In this document: piece after piece, positions 2,689 through 53,480 of the stretch
How the letters are laid out: each line of letters starts with the position of its first letter
Position numbering within the stretch: position 1 is the stretch's first letter
Source: Bispira polyomma
Lineage: Eukaryota
DNA: 64,000 nt
Assembly: GCA_965649765.1 (NCBI GenBank)
Contig: OZ287750.1
Span: 26,040,001 to 26,104,000 of the forward strand
Reading direction: 5' to 3'
Translations under genes and position numbers: made by a program
Notes under the pieces: model-generated
Told to the model about the DNA's origin: nothing
The model's input: the letters and a program-made list of their open reading frames with translations, nothing else
Database searches by the model: none

Positions 2689-3041
2689 GTTGCATGATAT
2701 AGGAATATAAACTATATATTTAAATTTTTCACTTTTAAATTTGTTTAAGTTTACTGCCATGTGTACAGGAAGTGGTATATATAGGTTATCCCTGGGTTAT
2801 TGGTACATACTACTGCATACTAAATGTTAAAGCTAACCCAATTCTGATATTTTAATAACAATAAATCCAACTGCCTAGAAAATATAACAATATTGATTTG
2901 AAAAATACCCCATTTGACACTATAGCTAACTATTTGAAGTTGTCAATGTGTTGTTGCATCGTTGGACTAAACATAGGGAAAGAAAAACCCTGCAGAAATA
3001 AAGAGGTTTGGATTGTTGTATTACTTCTTGTGTTTTTTCAG

Positions 3042-3425
3042 TTCAACCATTTCCGTTTCCCAAAGGTCTCGCCTCAGGATCGGGTCATGCACACAATCTT
3101 TCTGTTGATGCTCCTGCTGATGATCGGCTGTGCCATCGCCACAGTCATGTGTTTTCTCTCAGACAAGGGACAGATCACCAAGTTCCCGAGGAATCGGGTG
3201 GACTTGACGACGGAAGAGATCATTACGCTGTCGTGTGGCGTCCTGTTCTTTGTGTCCTTCTTTGTGGCGATGTCTGTACAGATCAAGGCCAAGCACACGG
3301 TCTACCAACTCTTCCTTAAGTTCATTATGCAAAACATGGAGTGGGAGATCGATGAATACGATAAGAGTAAAGACTCACTGTACGCCAATAGGAATACATA
3401 CAAAGTGCCGCCCGCATACGTTTGA
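3042..3425 (+). CDS. Terminal coding exon of the MARCH4/9/11-like E3 ligase (two TM helices plus cytoplasmic tail)
   Basis: Acceptor tgttttttcag|TTC. Two hydrophobic helices (HTIFLLMLLLMIGCAIATVMCFL; IITLSCGVLFFVSFFVAMSVQI). Post-TM VYQLFLKF...NMEWEIDEYDKSKD resembles the MARCH4/9/11 post-TM segment. GC-richer than the flanks; stop TGA at 3423-3425. Confidence 0.88.
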   Translation, partial: FNHFRFPKVSPQDRVMHTIFLLMLLLMIGCAIATVMCFLSDKGQITKFPRNRVDLTTEEIITLSCGVLFFVSFFVAMSVQIKAKHTVYQLFLKFIMQNMEWEIDEYDKSKDSLYANRNTYKVPPAYV

Positions 3426-38029: not shown

Positions 38030-41022
38030 TATACGGGGTGTTAAATGCTAGATCCGTGAGGAACAAGGGTCTACTCCTTGTAGATATTGTGACATCGCAC
38101 GACCTCGACTTCCTTTGTGTTACTGAGACCCATGTCCGTCTATCTGATACGGATAGCTTCCTATGGTCTGTTACTCCTCCAGATTTTGTGTTTCCTCAAA
38201 CGCCTCGTCCCTCACGGATTGGTGGCGGTGTTGGTTTCTTCATCAGATCCTCCTACAAACCACATAAAATAGATTCTCCTGTCTATCAGTCCTTTGAAAA
38301 TATGGTGGTGTCAATTGGGCTTCATGGCCGCTCACTGTTGCTTGCCTGCGTCTATCGCCCCCAAGGATCATGTACCTGTAATTTTTTAGAAGAATTTATG
38401 TCTTTTGTTGGTTTCTTGTCTTCCATTAACAGTTCATATCATATCTGTGGTGACTTTAACATCCATGTTGATGCACCAGTTGGTGACGGTCATAAATTTA
38501 TGACCTTTCTTGATTCATGCGATTTAAAACAGTTAGTTAGACAACCTACCCATCTGCATGGTCACATTCTGGACCTTATTTTATCTCCTTGTGATCAGGA
38601 TACTATTGTGGATGTCAAAGTCTGTGATTTCATATCGGATCATGCATTAGTCAAATGCTCAATTGCTTCTCCCCCTCAGGTGGCTCATATTCCTAATACA
38701 GTGCATTATAGGAGGTACCACCGTATTAACATGTCTGACCTCCGTACTGATCTTGAGAGTACTTCCTTTATTAAGTCACCTGCCAATTCTGTAGCCAAAC
38801 TTTATGAACAATACATGACTTGGGTGATGTACTAGATAAGCATGCACCACTTGTATCCAGAATGTCAAAGAAAGAATCTGTGCATTGACTCTCTGATTCT
38901 TACCGACGGGCTAAATCTCTCAGGCGCCAATATGAAAGAACTTGGCGAAGGGCCAAGAATCCATTAAATAGAAGTCGACTATGTCGCCAGATTGCTCGGT
39001 GCAATGTACTTGTTAACGAGGATAAGTCGGTGTATTACAGTAAACTTATCTCTGACAACAGTCACAACTCCAGGAAGCTGTGGCACGAACTGCGCAAGAC
39101 CCTTAATATGGATACCAATGTGGCACTCCCGTCCCATGATTCTGATAAATCACTAGCTGATAAGTTTGCTTCCTTTTTTCGGACAAAATTAAGAGAATTA
39201 GGGATACTTTTATTGTCTCTGGAACTAAAATTGATGTTCATCCTCTTTCTGATCCCCCAGAAATTACTGCCTTTGCCAGAGTCTCTGAAGATGATGTTAG
39301 TAAAATAATAAGTAACTCGCCTACAAAATCCTGCATGTTGGATCCATGGCCAACATCTCTTATTAAAGAATGTAGTGATATATTACTACCATCCATTACA
39401 AAACTTGTAAACTGCTCACTTACGGAGGGACATGTACCTGATGGTTTTAAAACAGCTGTGGTTACTCCTCTTATTAAGAAGGCTTCTCTTCCAGTTAATG
39501 ACCTGAAGAATTATCGCCCTGTATCTGGTCTTAGTTTCATATCAAAACTGGTTGAACGCGTGGTTGCTAGGCAACTGTTAGATCACATCTTTGTCCACGA
39601 CTTGGACAACCCATACCAGTCTGCGTATAAAACTGGTCATTCAACTGAGACAGCTCTTCTGTCTATAAAAAATGAAGTTCACTTATCTTTGTCAAGAGGG
39701 GAACCTACTGCCCTGGTATTGCTCGACCTCTCTGCTGCCTTTGACACCATTGATCATTCCACGCTTCTCAGTTGTCTTCAGACTTGGTTTGGAGTTACGG
39801 GCTCTATTCTTAAATGGTTCACTTCCTACTTAACTGATCGTTATCAGTCAATAAAAATTGGCTCTACTCTGTCCGTTCTTTGTAAACTCTTGTTTGGTGT
39901 CCCTCAAGGTTCTGTTTTGGGCCCTCTGTTGTTCTCATTATACACTGCTCCTCTCAGATTGGTTATTGGCAAATACACAGGAATAAAGTTTCATTTTTAT
40001 GCAGATGATACCCAAATTTATGTGCACCTATCCCATAAAAACACATCTACTGCCTTTGAACAGTTGAACAGGTGTCTTGATGATGTGAAAGAGTGGATGT
40101 CAACTGGTAAACTCAAACTTAATCCCGACAAGACTGAGTTCATAATCTTTGGCTCAAAACAACAGAGGGATAAGTTAAAAGCATTGTTTCCAGTTGACAT
40201 CCTGGGTAGCCCTTTCAGTCCAGCTGATTCTGTCAAGAACCTGGGTGTATGGTTTGACTCTGACTTTTCTTTCTCTAAACACGTTCAGAGTGTCTGCAAA
40301 AGCTGTTTTATGCAACTCCGTGACTTTAGACGTGTCAGACGGTTTCTCACTTATGATGCTTCGATACTTGTGGCCAATGCTTTTGTCAGTAGTAGACTGG
40401 ATTACTGCAATTCACTTTTCAGGAGTCTCTCAAAGTTTAATTTACGCAAATTACAATGCATTCAAAATAGTGCAGCTAGAATTGTGTCAAACACCAGTCG
40501 ATACACTAGTATAACTCCTGTTCTTAAGAAATTGCATTGGCTCCCTGTTGGACAGCGTTCAGTGTTTAAGACAGCTACACTTGTTTATAAGTTTCTCCAC
40601 ACTGGGTTTCCAAAGTATTTTGCCCCATATCTTTCCACTTACAGTAGTTCCTACAATACCAGACGTAGTCAGAGTGGTAGTAATTTCCTTGTTGTTCCGA
40701 AGTTCCACCCATCTACTCAAAGGTCGGTAAAACAGTTTGGTCACAGCTTTGCTTTTGATGCTCCCATTGTTTGGAATGGTCTTCCTGATGTGATTCGTGC
40801 TTCCCCCTCACTAGCCTGTTTTAGAAAGAAGCTTAAAACCCACTTGTACACTAAAGCATATCCACCTTAGTCTCAATCATCCCCCGGTGCGCTCTATGTT
40901 GCTGACCCTTTTTCTGTCCCTTGATTTTGGAAATTGGATAACTGTCTTTTGTGCTGGTGTGCCTTAGAGTCCCCTTTGTTAAGGGGAGATTACGCGCAAT
41001 AAAAGTCTAATTACAATTACAA
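38030..41022 (+). mobile_element. L2-clade (CR1 group) non-LTR retrotransposon, 5'-truncated at the start of ORF2 and lightly disabled
   Basis: APE motifs (LNARS, TET, GGGVG, YRP, GDFN, SDH) in 38038-38835. RT motifs (NYRPVS, LLDLSAAFDTIDH, GVPQGSVLGP, YADD, RLDYCNSL, LHWLP, WNGLP) in 39335-40870. Frameshifts near 38818 and 39175, TGA near 38887. 3' stem-loop and (ATTACA)n tail. Confidence 0.95.
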
Positions 41023-46668: not shown

Positions 46669-46728
46669 ATGAAGATGGAAGCCCAGACTCCGCCCACTAA
46701 CGGGTTGCAGCAGTTCAGACAATTACTA
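46669..46728 (+). CDS. First coding exon of an uncharacterised single-pass membrane protein
   Basis: ATG at 46669 (second ATG at 46675 in AAGATGG context); in-frame upstream TGA at 46657. Translates MKMEAQTPPTNGLQQFRQLL. The donor |gtgagt is phase 0, matching the acceptor at 50267. Confidence 0.65.
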
Positions 46729-46829
46729 GTGAGTACATGACATAAAGAAATAAAATATTTTCTTTGAAAATAGTAGAATTCTAGTAACATTTAATTTGTC
46801 CTGAAAAAATTCAATTCTCGGTAATCCTG

Positions 46830-46937
46830 GGCCCATATTCACGAAAAAACTTAGCCAGGTCTTAGGCTAAAATCAGTATACTTTTGTGCTAGGTTTAAGT
46901 CTTAGACCTGGCTAAGTCCTTTTCGTGAATACGGGCC
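46830..46937. mobile_element. Small hairpin MITE, Harbinger-like, in intron 1 of the membrane-protein gene
   Basis: TIR GGCCC(A/G)TATTCACGAAAA, inner arms ACTTAGCCAGGTCT / AGACCTGGCTAAGT, CTG TSD. Confidence 0.82.
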
Positions 46938-49900
46938 CTGGACATTTTATTACGGGCCCTGGACACTTCTTTAGTCACAGACTCTGCCTACTAAAGGGGT
47001 GGGGCAGTTCAGATGTTCACTAGTGAGTTCTTAAATACTTAATACTTCACTATAGTTATGATTGTAACCCTTTTGACCCTATGTTATTGGCTAGCAACAG
47101 CTGACATCATTTATTACTCCTAGAACCTATGTCTGTTCTACTGACCAGCAGTTGACACCCCCAAAATATTATTTTATTTTAATTTAGTTCCTGGCAATAG
47201 AAATTGTTTGTAAAAAAAAATTCTTATTTTAAATTCAGATCATGGGAATAGTTTTCTCTTGGGGAATAAATTAAAACATTCATATCTATTTATATCTTTA
47301 TGTCATGTGATAGACAAGATTCCCCTCCTCACCCCCCCCCCCCCCCCAAATAAAAAAAAACCAAACAAACAAAAACACCACATATAAAACAGAAACTCGC
47401 TCAATGACAGTTGTTACAAATCAATGTCAGACATTAGTTGACATATTTCAAATTTAACTTTTTTATTTTGAAATTCAAGTATGGAGGTGGCTTATGTTAT
47501 TTTAGAATCATGAGTTTCTACATAAAACAGAATTTTCTGAATCATCCAAATTTGATAAGACAAATATTCGCCCTACTTAGAACTATCAGAGAGTGTTGAC
47601 ATGGACATATACACAATATAAGGTTTTTTTGTCCAAGTTATGTTACCATGTTTTCTGTAATAAAGGCCCCTCGGTAATTGTAGCCAATATTTTAGTCAGT
47701 CGATCTACTAGACTAAAATGTTATGGGAAAATCACTACATCTGTTCTTCAGGCAAATGTTAAAATAGTGCAACTTTTAAATTAGATAATCGTATGAGAAT
47801 GTCTGTATAAGCTTGTAAATTTCATTGACCTATGGTGATGTGAATAATTTGTTGATAGTTTAACTGTTTTATACATATGCTTTACACAACTGCATAACCA
47901 AAAATGCAAAGCCCTTAGGGCGCTTTTTACAGAAAATATGGTAATTTTGTTTTGTCTTGAAGCTTTTGTGCACTTTGAGATGATGCGGGGTATGGGGCAA
48001 GTGTAAGGCGGGCATCTCAACATGTGGGCTGTTTTAAAAAACCTGTGACTTTAATATTAAGTATAACTATTGTTTCCCAGAAAATCTCAAAATAAGCAAA
48101 AATAAAAAAAAAAAAAAAATAATAATAGGTAGGCATTTCGAAACAACCGCTGGTGTTGAACCGACACCTAACATGTCCTAAAAAGAATCACCAGCAAAAA
48201 ATATAGTGTAACAGCTTGTTCTTTTTAACACACACCAATAACATTCACATTTCTGAACCAGATATTTAGTACACAAACAAACATGTTTGGTTTGGGTTAA
48301 TTTCGCCACCAGCAGTTTTGCCACAAAACTTATGGGGGGGGGGGGGGAGTTAATTATGCCATGGTCTATTTTTGTATTCAGCGCATATATCAACTTTCAA
48401 TTGGTATTCAGAGTGCCGCTAATTAACCCTTTCATGACTGTAACTGTCAACTGCATCAGTTACTGCCATTCCTCTAATTGAAGAGATAGGCTAGGGAAAG
48501 GACCCAGTGACAGAGGACCACTATTTTAAGTGGTCATCCGAGCCACCAGGCAAGTTTGTGCACAGATCAAATGTTATCCCACCAACGGAACTAGTTACCA
48601 CCAACTTAAGTAGGACATTTTTTTACCAATATTTTGTGTAGATATTTTTATAATAATGCATTTTTACAAAAGGAATATGCTCAGGAATATCTGAATACTA
48701 ATTTACATACAGTTATTTATAGATCTTTACCCTTTAACAACCTTGATTGTCGATGACCGTTGACACCTTTTAATTCATAGAGACCATGCCTGTCAATTCA
48801 TATTGATCAACAGGAGTATACTGCAGTTGTCATATAACTCGGTTTGTGAGACAGTCTGTTTTCTACGGTTTCTATGAATTTTAGCGATAAGACTACTTTA
48901 TACAGGAGTACAAATTTTGGAGACTAAGTTTTACATAATATTGATTACATCTCATTATGGTGTGTAAAAAAAGGCCAAATGCGGCCATTTTTATTACATA
49001 AAACTGTACTTACCTTGTCCTAACAGACGCTATAGTTGATGGCTGTCAACTAAACCACAGTCATATAGCCGAAAAAGCTGTCAACCTACCTTAAACCTGT
49101 GGTTCAGTTACTCTGAAACTATTCCCTTGGTTATGGAAGGGTTAAATCCCATTATCTCATGTTTTACATATTAACAATTTAGAATAAGAAGAAACACAAC
49201 ACAGTATATTTGAATATCAATATTCTTTGGCATAGAATGTAACCCTGGCGAATAGAAATGTCTGTCAACTGCTAGCTGATGGACAAGAGGTTTACATAAG
49301 AAGTAAAAGAAGAGGACTAAAACTCTGCTTTGATGGAAATTATCTAAATCTCCAATTTTTAAAGCACGGTTGCAAAATGTCCTACCTTACATATGGGTGG
49401 TGAAATTTCCGTGGCCAAATTTCCAGTGGCGAATAATGACATACCACACAAGTTTGTATGATATTTACCAAGAAAGAGTTATTAACATTACTGAACTAGT
49501 TAGAATGCACATGCACAATTACATTATAATAACACCACTGAAGAATATATGTAAACTGTGAAAAGAAGCTACAACAATTTGTGTGTGAATGCAATTATCA
49601 CCAAAGGAACAAGGTAATAATAATAATAATAATAATAGAAGCATTTATAAAGCACAAAATTGATAAAAATCCTCTAATGTGCTGAATTCCAAAAAATGGA
49701 TAGTGCACTATATAAATTTGGTATATTTTTATTATTATTATTAATGCACGAATCCCTTACATGTTGTTTTGATGGCACTGCCATTATAAAAGATGGCAGC
49801 ATCCTTTTAGAATGAAAACAATAACAGGCTGTGCCTGATAAAAACAAGCATTTGTGTCCACTTTGAAGATAAGAGGCCAAAAGCAAAATTATAGGAAAAT

Positions 49901-50266
49901 TAATATACTTTTATAGTCATGAACACAGATCCTTTGAGAAAGAAGGCAGAAAATGCTCAAAGACTGAATCCAAATGAAGTGGAAATTTGTGTTGTCAAAT
50001 TATCTTTGAAGTACAGGTGAATTTCGGGCACTTTCTGAGATCAACACTTCGTTTAATTCATTGAAAATTCTCTGCGAAAATAAATACACTACTTCTATAT
50101 CCTTTAAGTTCAACATACAAGGTGGTTTTAAGTGCATTTGTTATTATTTTTTTCATAAGTTTTTGTTGCACTCTTCTTTGTAGCACTGTGATTTATAGAC
50201 GGAACCAGTTGACAGTAACTGAACGTATAATCTATAATTTAACCACATGATACCTTGTCTTTTCAG

Positions 50267-50430
50267 GATGTCAATGTAGTGTACAGTACAAAAAAACCCC
50301 AAACCAACTTTTTCGAAAGCACTCCTCAATTAGGATTCCAGGACTGGGAAATTGGGCTGACAATTGTGCTGGCTGTGACTGGTCTGATAGCAGTCTCTGC
50401 AGTGATGGTGTGGGCTATGTCATACAAAAG
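50267..50430 (+). CDS. Exon 2 of the uncharacterised membrane protein (transmembrane helix)
   Basis: Acceptor ccttgtcttttcag|, donor |gtatgt (phase 2). Translates DVNVVYSTKKPQTNFFESTPQLGFQDWE-IGLTIVLAVTGLIAVSAVMVWAM-SYK(R). Confidence 0.8.
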
Positions 50431-50805
50431 GTATGTATGTTATCTACACATGATTGGCCCCCTCAAAAAACCCTCTATTGTGACAGACGTTCTATATTAT
50501 GTAACCTACATCTGTTACAGTTTATGACCTCAGTTCTACTTTCTAATTAAATGCTATCTCTTTCCCCCTTGGTTCAACCTAAATTTCAAATTGAAGTAGA
50601 ACTTATACTTATAATTCCATGTTGGGACACAAGATTTTGTTCAGGTAATGGAAGGTTCATAAGATAAAAGAGGCATTTCAGTGTAAAACTATAGGAGCAC
50701 AAGTTTGGAAGAGTGGAAGTGTGTTCACAAAATTGAAATGACAAAACAACATGAATCAAAATCCTAAGCTTCAGACTAATTAAAGTCTAAGGCCTTTTGT
50801 AAATA

Positions 50806-50987
50806 CAGTAGAACCTCTATTATCCAACCTTCTATTATCTGACTATTCGACTTCACTCAATTTCACTCTCATAAACTTATTTTTCGCTAAGGTTTACAAC
50901 TAAAATGCTACTTTTATTTTACAAACCTTCTATTATCCGAATAAATTCTCACTTTTCCAAGATGTCCATAAAATAGAGGTTCTACTG
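50806..50987. mobile_element. ~180-bp Tc1/mariner(pogo)-type MITE family 1, the most abundant repeat in the window; copies or fragments near 1-93, 8265-8430, 12111-12559, 23720-23900, 24838-25025, 29110-29177, 30626, 31390-31461, 33400-33493, 35530-35675, 35734-35911, 36469-36651, 53940-54066 and 62520-62590
   Basis: TIR CAGTAGAACCTCTATT... / ...AATAGAGGTTCTACTG flanked by TA. Confidence 0.88.
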
Positions 50988-51149
50988 TAATGACTAAAAA
51001 CTTCTTCATCAGAGTGCTTCAAAAGATCTTCATTGAAGTTCATTCAAGTTGGACAGTTTCATTACATAAAATTTAAACAAGCAAACACTTCTAAAATATG
51101 TAAAAGTCCAGCTGTCCATTCAGTGGCCATTTTGACAAATTATTATCAT

Positions 51150-51290
51150 TATGTTGGCTCCTTCTCTCTGGAGTAATGTCCTACTCTTCATCAGGATAGC
51201 GAAGAACATTCCCTCTTTTGGAAAGCATATAGTTAAGTCTCATCCTTTCAACCAACCCTTGCCAACATAATATCCGTCCTTTTCGTTTGG
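51150..51290 (+). mobile_element. Degenerate L2-type LINE 3' remnant; similar remnants at ~26940-27040 (+) and ~16000-16250 (-)
   Basis: APSLWS...IR...SF...KSH.F pattern; the 26940 copy reads LWNGLP...FRKQL. Confidence 0.5.
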
Positions 51291-52012
51291 CTGAAGGGCG
51301 AGGGGGGCTCACCTCTGGGGATTGAATCCCAGATTCCTTCTTTATCTGAGAAAGTTTGTCATGTGCTTGCCGTAGTTCAGTGGTTTACATCACTGTTGCC
51401 CCTTACCACTAAACCACTGGGTGAATGTCAATCATTTTGTCCACAACTTTGGCTATACAGTACCCCTTTTATTATGAGTTTTTCCTGTGATTAGGATGCT
51501 ATGGCACTTTGATGCATTTTATGGGGAAAATTTAACCCGTTAAAAACACCTTAATAAAATAAACTTTTTTGATTCATGTAAAATAAGGCATCTAAAATTT
51601 GCCACTTTGTCTAAAATTTGCCACCCCTAAAATTTAAGCCAAATCAATAAAGAAACTGCAAAAAAATAACTGGAACTTAAGGAAGTACGGCAAAATAGTC
51701 AAAATATTACCCACAATTCTACCAAAAAACAAAACAATATGCAGGTGGCTAATTTCAGATACAGTGGTGAATTTTTGATTCTTTAGTCAGAAATATTCCA
51801 AATTTAATTATTATATTTTAGAAAACAGTACCAACTTTAGAGATGTGAAAAAATAGACAATGTATGAATATTTGTGTACAAAGTTTTTCTCTGCAATTTT
51901 AGTGTTAATTTAATTTCTGTCTTAAATTTTGGTGTAGCTTTTTCAACTGTTCAATTATACCTATCTTTAATAAATAAAAAAATAAAACACACCTTTTTTA
52001 TATCTTTTGTAG

Positions 52013-52532
52013 AAAATCTAACATTCGGCGACAAGAGTTCAACGAACGGATGTCCCAGTACTACGACAGCATCTCTATTACCGGCAATAACCTCCCGAGT
52101 TACGGCGACACAAGACGACACAGCAACGACTCTATGTGCACTGTGTTCACCATTATGTCCACTCCCATCTCTTCTAGGACCGGAAGCCTGGCCACTTCTG
52201 TCCATCACCCTCGGTCCTTCTCCTCTTTAGACACAGCCAGCACAAGTCTATCACCATCTGTCTATCATCAAGGCAAGCAATCGGACTACAAGTTCTCCTT
52301 AGAAGACACAGTGAAAAAGCTGAGAGAATTAGACTGTGACAACAACATTTCACAGATGAGGACCTCCTACTGGTCAGAGTGTGAGCTAGACATATCTTTT
52401 AGTCTCAGTGAGGAAGCAGAGCGTGAGATCATGGAGGATGACACGGAAGGATGTATAGGAACTCAGGACCTGTTTAGTAAAGCTGTTCTTAGGATAGACA
52501 ATAGGTTGTTCTCAGAATGCTCAGTTTTGTAG
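52013..52532 (+). CDS. Exon 3 (terminal) of the uncharacterised membrane protein; Ser/Thr-rich then acidic cytoplasmic tail
   Basis: Acceptor tatcttttgtag|A. The phase-2 join gives the basic stop-transfer RKSNIRRQ and runs in frame into ORF 52050-52532. Ends FSECSVL*. Total CDS 744 nt. Confidence 0.82.
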
Positions 52533-52940
52533 CACAACAGTACAATTTCTTTCTATGGTAATATATACAGTTCAACATGTATATTATTTGAACTAATGGT
52601 CTCAGTGTGAGCTATAGATATATCCTTTATAGTCTCAGCCAGAAGGAGGCAGAGCGTGGGATGATGAAGGATGACATGGAAGGGTGTACAGAGACTCAGG
52701 ACCCGTTTAGTAAAGCGGTTCTTAAGATAGACAATGCATTGTTTTTAGACAAGTGCTTGGATTCATAGCACAACAGTACAGTTGGCTTTATTTCTATGGT
52801 ATTATACAGCAGAACATCTCTATTATCTGGTCTCAATGTGAGTTAGATATATAACTTTTAGTCTCAGTTAGAAGGCAGAACGTGAGATTATGGAGGATGA
52901 CACCGAAAGCTATCCAGAAACTCAGGATCCGTTTAGTAAA
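52371..52940 (+). repeat. Diverged tandem triplication (~226-231 bp) of the end of exon 3 and the start of the 3'UTR
   Basis: Units start at 52371, 52597 and 52828; the third is truncated. Confidence 0.9.
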
Positions 52941-53118
52941 TTGAGTTGATAAAATTTAACTAAAATAGTAGCTTGGATATTAGAAGTTCTACTGTACAAT
53001 TAACGTAAAAATAATGACAATTGTAATGTTGTACTAGAAGTCAAAACAATTTAAGAACAATTCATTGAACTTCTAATATCCAAGCTACTATTTTAGTTAA
53101 ATTTTATCAACTCAATTT
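52938..53118. repeat. Perfect 52-bp inverted repeat with a 77-bp spacer
   Basis: 52938-52989 is the exact reverse complement of 53067-53118. Confidence 0.92.
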
Positions 53119-53248: not shown

Positions 53249-53480
53249 GGGGCTATATCCACAAAAGGTCTTAGTCTTAACTCAGTCTTAAGCTTAACAT
53301 TTGTGTCTAAAATATCTAAGACTGCTTACTATTAATCTTAGTGTTAAGAGCCAAATCAACACACTAAGCCCAAATATTTACTTGCTCTCATTGGGACTAT
53401 AACCAAATTCTTAACCTTTTCGGCCAAAACCATAATCTTAAGACTAAGTTAATACTAAAACCTCTTGTAAAAACGGCCCC
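53249..53480. mobile_element. ~230-bp Harbinger-like MITE family; other copies at ~12214-12442, 21438-21660, 26173-26537, 27187-27380, 58588-58820 and 61176-61385
   Basis: GGGGC...GCCCC termini, often at CWG; repeated GTCTTAGTCTTAA / TTAAGACTAA subterminal motifs; shared interior. Confidence 0.8.

What the first reader, a model, noticed from the sequence alone, without database searches (positions are those of the whole stretch)
46669..52532. Hidden three-exon gene for an unrecognised type III transmembrane adaptor-like protein
Seen: three exons with canonical splice sites and matching phases (0/0 and 2/2) give one 247-aa ORF. It has ~48 extracellular residues with no signal peptide, one 23-aa TM helix, a basic KRKSNIRR stop-transfer, and a ~175-aa tail with no recognisable domain (S/T-rich, then acidic) carrying YDSI, LPSY and a terminal CSVL. 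Known: this layout is that of transmembrane adaptors (LAT/PAG type) and of PY-motif sorting adaptors such as Commissureless and PRRG. Inference: a lineage-restricted signalling or sorting adaptor. I recognise no homologue.
Basis: partly seen in the sequence, partly recalled or inferred. Interest (0 to 1): 0.78.

Follow-up and report, generated by a model that had tools for sequence, protein, structure and literature searches.

The report
Unnamed small worm membrane-adaptor gene
The three exons form a real, conserved gene of a marine worm. It encodes a small single-pass membrane protein of an unnamed family known from only a few related animals, and its tail looks built to dock cytoplasmic scaffold and sorting proteins, which is still untested.

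Summary
Exons 46669-46728, 50267-50430 and 52013-52532 translate as described into 247 aa, with GT/AG sites and phases 0 and 2.

Exons 2 and 3 are certainly coding:
- A paralog lies 12 Mb away on the same chromosome, and a related assembly holds orthologs of both genes.
- All keep the same acceptor, the same phase-2 donor after the TM/basic cluster, and the same last-exon start.
- Only the exons are conserved, and pN is far below pS (0.13-0.30 against 0.74-0.76).

Exon 1 is probable, about 0.75. Its best partner in the ortholog has the same ATG-to-donor length and 29/57 identities.

No RNA run was available, so no splice junction was seen.

The family has no name. A profile search of 1.84 billion proteins found four unannotated ORF fragments. 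Pfam, PDB and the ESM Atlas gave nothing.

Invariant features are a Y-x-S-I motif about 17 residues after the membrane, an F-S-L-E-D helix, and a C-terminal E-x-[S/T]-x-L, which is a class I PDZ-ligand form. LPSY is not conserved, and CSVL is not a CaaX box for the family.

Best reading: a type III membrane anchor or sorting adaptor that works through short motifs.

Both paralogs independently carry tandem arrays of their 3' coding end. These fit the "mirage" arrays the scan already noted in this genome.

The parts
46669..46728 (+). Exon 1, coding part (20 codons from ATG; donor GTGAGT at 46729). Probable, not proven.
   Evidence: Translation. An in-frame stop lies 4 codons upstream. It is the best partner of L012 6759-6818 among all ATG..GT phase-0 candidates, with the same length and 29/57 identities, p 1.1e-4.
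50267..50430 (+). Exon 2: the membrane-proximal ectodomain, the TM helix and the start of the basic cluster. It has a phase-0 acceptor and a phase-2 donor.
   Evidence: The ortholog L012 9382-9524 has identical boundaries. The paralog L006 2937-3076 and its ortholog L014 8497-8636 have the same donor phase.
50351..50419 (+). Transmembrane helix of about 23 residues. Acidic D-W-E lies on its N-side and Y-K-R-K on its C-side, which gives N-out/C-in by the positive-inside rule.
   Evidence: Kyte-Doolittle 19-residue mean is 2.42 here and 2.65 in the ortholog. The TM stretch and its flanks are the most strongly conserved part of the exon-2 alignment with the ortholog.
52013..52532 (+). Exon 3: 1 base plus 172 codons plus TAG. 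It encodes the whole cytoplasmic tail.
   Evidence: The paralog matches at E 1.9e-20 and the ortholog at E 6e-40. pN is 0.30 against pS 0.76.
52062..52073 (+). Y-D-S-I, a Y-x-x-hydrophobic motif 17-20 residues into the tail.
   Evidence: Y, S and I are invariant in all six family sequences. The motif lies at the end of a predicted juxtamembrane helix.
52284..52370 (+). Most conserved block of the tail (D-Y-K-F-S-L-E-D ... N-I ... Y). It is predicted helical.
   Evidence: F-S-L-E-D, L, D, N and Y are invariant. AlphaFold2 predicts helices at residues 96-108 and 111-128 with block pLDDT 70-78. It is the only part of the tail that is also conserved at DNA level with the paralog.
52515..52529 (+). 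C-terminal E-C-S-V-L, one form of the family-wide E-x-[S/T]-x-L-COOH.
   Evidence: E at -5 and L at 0 are invariant, and S or T stands at -2 in all six sequences: SVL, SDL, TYL and THL three times.
52380..52940 (+). Tandem array of 2.5 copies (period 233) covering the last ~50 codons, the stop and about 65 nt of flank. Copy 2 (ORF 52634-52768) is open. Copy 3 is broken.
   Evidence: It is absent from the ortholog. A short-read contig lies on 51752-52649 without differences and continues beyond that stretch.

Best explanation
Shown: this is a genuine gene under purifying selection, with at least three exons. It encodes a ~247-aa single-pass membrane protein of an unnamed family. The family has two paralogs in this genome and both are present in a related assembly. 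Two further sequences come from a third sample and from a marine-biofilm metagenome.

Inferred layout:
- The short S/T/P-rich N-terminus (about 48 aa, no signal peptide) faces outside.
- The ~175-aa tail is cytoplasmic and mostly disordered.

Inferred mechanism: the tail acts through short linear motifs as a membrane anchor or sorting adaptor.
- A Y-x-S-I motif about 17 residues from the membrane could be read by the mu subunit of AP-type clathrin adaptors, or by an SH2 domain after phosphorylation.
- A conserved amphipathic helix (F-S-L-E-D...K-L..E-L-D) would be a docking surface for an unknown partner.
- A free C-terminus E-x-[S/T]-x-L would fit the groove of a class I PDZ domain of a cortical scaffold.

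On this reading the protein tethers a PDZ scaffold to a membrane domain, and its own surface level is set by endocytic sorting.
For: Gene reality:
- Exon boundaries and phases are identical in four loci.
- A phase-2 donor also follows the TM/basic cluster in the distant metagenome member. I read this by eye from L013.
- Conservation is confined to the exons, and pN is far below pS.
- Exon 1 has statistical support.

Topology:
- There is one strong hydrophobic segment, with acidic residues before it and a basic cluster after it.
- Exon 1 has no hydrophobic start in either species.

Motifs and tail:
- Y-x-S-I, F-S-L-E-D...L..D..N....Y and the C-terminal E-x-[S/T]-x-L are invariant across six sequences that are otherwise 25-53% identical.
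- AlphaFold2 gives mean pLDDT 53, with only the juxtamembrane helix and the helices at residues 96-128 reaching 70 or more.
- There is no domain hit in Pfam or PDB.

That YxxPhi and [S/T]-x-Phi-COOH are AP-mu and class I PDZ recognition patterns is established knowledge. It was not tested here.
Against: - There is no RNA evidence: the only runs that hold the locus are genomic.
- Short motifs arise easily, and their conservation does not name their readers.
- The Y-x-S-I motif sits at the end of a predicted helix, whereas AP-mu binds extended peptides.
- The TM segment is more conserved than most of the tail, which hints at an intramembrane partner that this model does not explain.
- Copy 2 of the tandem array would end without a PDZ-type terminus.
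- Exon 1, and with it the absence of a signal peptide, rests on a two-species comparison with a corrected p of about 0.01.
Confidence: 0.45

Rival explanations
1. It is a phosphotyrosine signalling adaptor of the LAT/PAG (TRAP) type. A kinase phosphorylates the tail tyrosines, and SH2-domain proteins then assemble on them.
For: It has the type III layout with a short ectodomain and a long disordered tail. Two tyrosines are invariant, in Y-x-S-I and at residue 119. In the metagenome member the motif reads S-V-Y-H-S-I, which fits the ITIM pattern. From my own knowledge, PAG also ends in a PDZ ligand.
Against: Only two tyrosines are invariant, and there is no YxN site. The window gene and its ortholog have no juxtamembrane CxxC palmitoylation motif. 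In five of six sequences the residue at -2 of the tyrosine is not S/I/V/L. No sequence similarity to any TRAP was found.
Confidence: 0.15
2. It is an auxiliary subunit of a channel, transporter or receptor, in the manner of KCNE or FXYD. The TM helix packs against a multi-pass partner, and the tail regulates that partner's traffic.
For: The TM segment and its flanks are the best-conserved part between the orthologs, far above the 56% identity of the tail. The protein is small and single-pass and has no signal peptide.
Against: There is no similarity to KCNE, FXYD or any other Pfam family. The TM is not conserved between the two paralog types except for the W before it. A 175-aa tail is long for such subunits.
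Confidence: 0.15
3. The three exons are the 3' part of a larger gene. Its true first exons lie further upstream and add a signal peptide and a real ectodomain.
For: No transcript was seen. For the paralog pair no first exon could be found within 13 kb and 8.5 kb upstream. In the metagenome member the TM exon begins just before the TM, so its ectodomain lies on other exons. I read this by eye from L013.
Against: Exon 1 is conserved with the ortholog at the same length and phase. Its ATG is the first in a frame closed by upstream stops in both species. No other conserved coding segment exists in 30 kb upstream of exon 2 in the window against 9.4 kb upstream in the ortholog, nor anywhere else in the 64-kb window against the ortholog's 20 kb.
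Confidence: 0.12
4. It is a chance ORF or a decaying pseudogene.
For: There is no expression evidence. The genome is AT-rich and the exons are short.
Against: The frames are open in all five loci, the splice sites are conserved, pN/pS is far below 1 at saturated synonymous divergence, and there are invariant motifs.
Confidence: 0.02

Closest known systems
PAG/Cbp and the other transmembrane adaptor proteins (LAT, NTAL, LIME)
   Same: Type III single-pass layout with a very short ectodomain, no signal peptide and a long disordered tail that works through short motifs. From my own knowledge, PAG also ends in a class I PDZ ligand that binds EBP50/NHERF1.
   Different: No sequence similarity. There is no juxtamembrane CxxC, only two invariant tyrosines, and no YxN or multi-tyrosine array. 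The animal lineage is also different.
Glycophorin C
   Same: From my own knowledge, it is a type III membrane protein with a short, probably O-glycosylated N-terminus, and its tail ends in a PDZ ligand that anchors a cortical scaffold.
   Different: No similarity was detected. The tail here is three to four times longer and carries a conserved helix and a Y-x-S-I motif. The juxtamembrane 4.1/FERM-type motif was not seen.
Podocalyxin/CD34 family tails (C-terminal D-T-H-L / D-T-E-L)
   Same: Three of the six family sequences end in (E)-x-T-H-L, preceded by acidic residues. This resembles the NHERF-binding D-T-H-L terminus, which I cite from my own knowledge.
   Different: There is no large mucin ectodomain or signal peptide. 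No Pfam family, including a CD34-type model, matched. The likeness covers 3-4 residues and may be convergent.
PY-motif sorting adaptors (Commissureless, PRRG, NDFIP)
   Same: Small membrane proteins whose tails recruit sorting machinery. The window gene has one L-P-S-Y.
   Different: L-P-S-Y is absent from the ortholog, from the paralog pair and from the two other members. It is therefore not a feature of the family.
KCNE / FXYD single-pass auxiliary subunits
   Same: Small single-pass proteins with a short N-out ectodomain. The TM is well conserved between the orthologs.
   Different: No Pfam hit for either exon. The tail is much longer and has its own conserved motifs.

Membership tests
Transmembrane adaptor proteins (LAT/PAG type) | Short ectodomain without a cleavable signal peptide (type III) | tested here: met
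   About 48 residues precede the TM. Exon 1 has no hydrophobic start in the window or in the ortholog. This depends on exon 1, which has a corrected p of about 0.01.
Transmembrane adaptor proteins (LAT/PAG type) | Juxtamembrane CxxC palmitoylation motif | tested here: not met
   The window gene and its ortholog have no cysteine at the cytoplasmic end of the TM or in the basic cluster. The paralog type has cysteines inside the TM only.
Transmembrane adaptor proteins (LAT/PAG type) | Several conserved tyrosine motifs for SH2 domains (YxN and others) | tested here: not met
   Only Y17 and Y119 are invariant, and no YxN is conserved.
PY-motif adaptors (Commissureless/PRRG/NDFIP) | Conserved [LP]PxY motif(s) in the tail | tested here: not met
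   L-P-S-Y occurs only in the window gene. The aligned residues differ in the other five sequences.
Proteins with a class I PDZ-binding C-terminus | Free C-terminus [S/T]-x-hydrophobic | tested here: met
   The termini are SVL, SDL, TYL and THL three times, with an invariant E at -5. Binding itself cannot be tested with these tools.
Cargo with a tyrosine-based (YxxPhi) sorting signal | Y-x-x-bulky hydrophobic in the cytoplasmic tail, more than 6 residues from the membrane | tested here: met
   Y-D-S-I in five sequences and Y-H-S-I in one, at tail residues 17-20. Recognition by an AP complex cannot be tested here.
CaaX-prenylated proteins | Cysteine at -4 from the C-terminus, conserved | tested here: not met
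   C at -4 occurs only in the window gene and its ortholog (CSVL, CSDL). The other four sequences have S or V there.
Any Pfam-A family or solved structure | Profile match above the curated threshold | tested here: not met
   The best Pfam hits have E 0.01-0.15, each in a single member, and all fall below their cut-offs. The PDB profile search returned 0 hits at E up to 10.

The most novel reading that the evidence does not exclude
This would be the founding member of a fan-worm-restricted family of PAG-like membrane adaptors in which the tandem 'mirage'-type arrays at the 3' coding end have been recruited as alternative terminal exons. Splicing from the phase-2 donor of exon 2 into copy 2 (open frame 52634-52768) would give a short isoform that lacks the Y-x-S-I motif and the helix and ends without a PDZ ligand. 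That isoform would uncouple the membrane anchor from its scaffold.
Probability: 0.08. Interest if true: 0.6.

Novelty: new member of a known kind. Interest (0 to 1): 0.35.

Why it matters
The gene adds a conserved family to the poorly charted set of small single-pass proteins of annelids, and no database names it. Gene callers miss such proteins easily: the public hits here are all bare ORF fragments. The three invariant motifs give direct hypotheses to test, namely PDZ scaffold docking and tyrosine-based sorting. The interest is moderate, because lineage-restricted single-pass proteins with motif-rich disordered tails are common and no function has been shown. The parallel 3'-end arrays in both paralogs add two cases at coding 3' ends to the exon-edge tandem arrays that the scan has already noted across this genome.

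Tried and rejected
RNA evidence:
- The look-up of sequencing runs listed only three runs of one study. Their contigs cover the introns evenly at depth 10-90, so they are genomic.

Homology searches:
- The word search with exon 3 found nothing.
- The word search with the six-sequence profile found only P0002 and P0004, and the search with P0004 found only itself.
- The full HMM search found only four unannotated fragments.
- The JGI metagenome scan found nothing.
- The best ESM Atlas score was 0.76, which is at noise level.
- PDB gave nothing, and Pfam gave nothing consistent.
- No fold search was run, because the model has pTM 0.18.

Paralog gene:
- I looked for its exon 1 within 13 kb and 8.5 kb upstream and found no convincing candidate.
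- A conserved ~80-nt non-coding block (L006 1795-1872 against L014 5312-5391) has no shared ATG.

Smaller points:
- An internal donor that would splice copy 1 to copy 2 in frame exists in the paralog (TATAG|GTACAT) but not in the window gene. This is from reading, so I did not adopt it.
- The poly(A)-signal scan was uninformative in this AT-rich DNA.

The joined 247-aa protein was never submitted to any tool.


Full report
**What is in the sequence.** The window is AT-rich (35% G+C), CpG-depleted (observed/expected 0.42) eukaryotic DNA. It lies at G000:C3:26040001-26104000 of a 1.035-Gb assembly.

- 46669-46728 gives 20 codons from an ATG, followed by GTGAGT.
- 50267-50430 follows a pyrimidine-rich ...CAG, gives 54 codons plus two bases, and is followed by GTATGT.
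- 52013-52532 follows ...GTAG, starts with one base, then gives 172 codons and TAG.

The split codon is AGA, and the product is 247 residues. The exon-2 peptide has one strong hydrophobic stretch with a Kyte-Doolittle 19-residue mean of 2.42. Acidic D-W-E precedes it and a basic cluster follows it, which by the positive-inside rule puts the N-terminus outside and the tail inside.

**No expression test was possible.** Their contigs lie on introns and exons alike at depth 10-90; one contig, for example, covers 49817-50658 in one piece. They are therefore genomic DNA. The junctions 46728/50267 and 50430/52013 remain unseen. The same contigs agree with the assembly across exon 3 and into the tandem array (51752-52649, no differences).

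**Comparative evidence that the gene is real.**
- A search of the window's own genome with the exon-3 peptide found a paralog 12 Mb away on the same chromosome, at E 1.9e-20 and 49% identity over 136 residues. About 1.3 kb upstream of the paralog's last exon lies a TM exon.
- That TM exon ends in a phase-2 donor directly after the TM and its basic residues, and the last exon starts at the homologous codon.
- A profile of the two tails, scored against 1.84 billion representative proteins, found only four proteins, all bare ORF calls without name or Pfam domain.
- Two of the four lie on long contigs of one ENA assembly (L012, L014). They are the orthologs of the window gene and of the paralog.
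- In both orthologs the exon-2 acceptor, the phase-2 donor and the exon-3 acceptor sit at exactly the same codons.
- Between the whole 64-kb window and the 20-kb orthologous locus, only exons 2 and 3 are conserved.
- Synonymous sites are saturated while replacement sites are not: pN 0.30 against pS 0.76 for the window gene's last exon, and 0.127 against 0.742 for the paralog pair.
- The fourth hit, on a marine-biofilm metagenome scaffold (L013; sample named in PMC6355793), also shows a phase-2 donor after a TM/basic cluster, then an ~97-nt intron, then the tail exon. I read this by eye.

A chance ORF or a pseudogene is excluded.

**Exon 1.**
- In none of the four loci is there an in-frame ATG in the open frame upstream of exon 2. 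An upstream coding exon ending in phase 0 is therefore required.
- I listed every ATG-to-GT phase-0 segment upstream of exon 2 in the window and in the ortholog and scored all pairs.
A shuffle test of that pair alone gives p 0.004.
- From the second ATG of the ortholog the distance to the donor is the same 60 nt. Of the 57 bases between ATG and donor, 29 are identical, against a background of 0.27. The binomial p is 1.1e-4, about 0.01 after correcting for 112 pairs.
- Both ATGs are the first in frames closed by upstream stops, and neither peptide has a hydrophobic start.
- I rate exon 1 at about 0.75.
- No first exon was found for the paralog pair.

**What the family looks like.** Six tails align: the window gene, its ortholog, the paralog, its ortholog, a Logan contig ORF and the metagenome member. 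They are 25-53% identical to the window gene.

Invariant features:
- Q7 in the juxtamembrane R-Q-E-F-N stretch.
- Y-x-S-I at residues 17-20.
- S49 and P51.
- P81.
- F-S-L-E-D, then L, D, N and Y119.
- At the very end, E at -5 and L at 0, with S or T at -2 (SVL, SDL, TYL, THL three times).

L-P-S-Y is confined to the window gene. A cysteine at -4 is confined to the window gene and its ortholog.

AlphaFold2 on this alignment gives mean pLDDT 53. Only a juxtamembrane helix (residues 2-18) and helices at residues 96-108 and 111-128, over the F-S-L-E-D block, reach 70-78. The rest is predicted disordered.

No lead came from any of these:
- Pfam on each member.
- A PDB profile search.
- The ESM Atlas, best score 0.76.
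- The two further word searches.
- A JGI metagenome scan.

The joined protein was not submitted anywhere.

**How it most likely works.**
- Shown: a conserved small single-pass protein with a short outside part and a long, mostly disordered inside tail that carries three invariant short elements.
- Inferred: the tail is a motif platform. Y-x-x-hydrophobic is the pattern read by the mu subunits of clathrin adaptor complexes, or by SH2 domains once phosphorylated. [S/T]-x-hydrophobic at a free C-terminus is the class I PDZ ligand. Both are textbook patterns and were not tested here.
- The helix would be a third docking site, for an unknown partner.
- I therefore read the protein as a membrane anchor or sorting adaptor for a cortical PDZ scaffold (confidence 0.45).

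Rivals:
- A phosphotyrosine adaptor of the LAT/PAG type (0.15). The layout fits, but the CxxC motif and the multi-tyrosine array were tested and not met.
- An auxiliary subunit that works through its unusually well conserved TM helix (0.15).
- A larger gene with undiscovered upstream exons (0.12).

**The tandem 3' end.**
- The last ~50 codons, the stop and about 65 nt of flank are repeated 2.5 times (52380-52940, period 233).
- The paralog has its own 2.6-copy array (period 181) that starts about eight codons earlier at the homologous place.
- Neither ortholog has an array. The two arrays therefore arose separately in this lineage.
- In both genes copy 2 keeps an open frame downstream of an acceptor-like AG (44 and 40 codons). 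Its pN/pS against copy 1 is 0.38 and 0.40. Copy 3 is broken in both.
- Earlier notes of this scan (s1-576399, s1-603385 and others) say that exon-edge 'mirage' minisatellites are common across this genome, which they call an annelid fan worm, and nearly absent from a relative.
- The term comes from amphioxus genes (PMC3087553).
- My result agrees with that picture. Whether copy 2 serves as an alternative terminal exon, as note s1-688990 proposes, needs RNA.

**Verdict.** The gene is real. Exons 2-3 are certain, exon 1 is probable, and expression is untested. The 'adaptor-like' reading is reasonable but needs correcting in its details: PDZ-type terminus and Y-x-S-I yes; PY motif, CaaX box and LAT/PAG membership no. 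It is a new, unnamed, lineage-restricted family of a familiar architectural kind.

Noticed in passing
window 52380-52940; L006 4735-5216 (G000:C3:14109735-14110216): Both paralogs carry independent 2.5-2.6-copy tandem arrays of the last ~50 codons plus the stop. The orthologs in the related assembly have none. Copy 2 stays open in both genes and copy 3 is broken in both.
   Followed up: partly
window 52938-52989 and 53067-53118: A perfect 52-nt inverted repeat with a 77-nt spacer sits exactly where copy 3 of the tandem array breaks off. It looks like a foldback or MITE-like insertion.
   Followed up: no
window 38038-40870 (+): Two long ORFs of 265 and 511 aa. The second contains an F-Y-A-D-D motif typical of reverse transcriptases. 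They look like a non-LTR retrotransposon about 6 kb upstream of exon 1 (read by eye, no Pfam scan).
   Followed up: no
window 46850-47049, 48450-48649, 49650-49849, 50650-51049, 51450-51849: These intron stretches have word depths of 10^4-10^5 in the DNA runs, against about 10 for the exons. They are very high-copy interspersed repeats that fill both introns. A related ~90-nt element also lies downstream of both paralogs (window 53269-53360 against C3:14111187-14111278).
   Followed up: no
L006 1795-1872 vs L014 5312-5391: An ~80-nt block, 75% identical, lies 1.1 kb and 3.1 kb upstream of the paralog's TM exon in the two species, with no shared ATG. It could be a 5'-UTR exon or a promoter element of the paralog.
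   Followed up: partly
window 2898-3425 (+): A 175-aa ORF with several hydrophobic stretches. It may be an exon of an unrelated membrane-protein gene.
   Followed up: no
L013 1-1185: A marine-biofilm metagenome scaffold holds the TM exon, an ~97-nt intron and a 259-codon last exon of a distant family member that ends in E-E-V-T-H-L. It is animal DNA inside a 'microbial' metagenome.
   Followed up: partly
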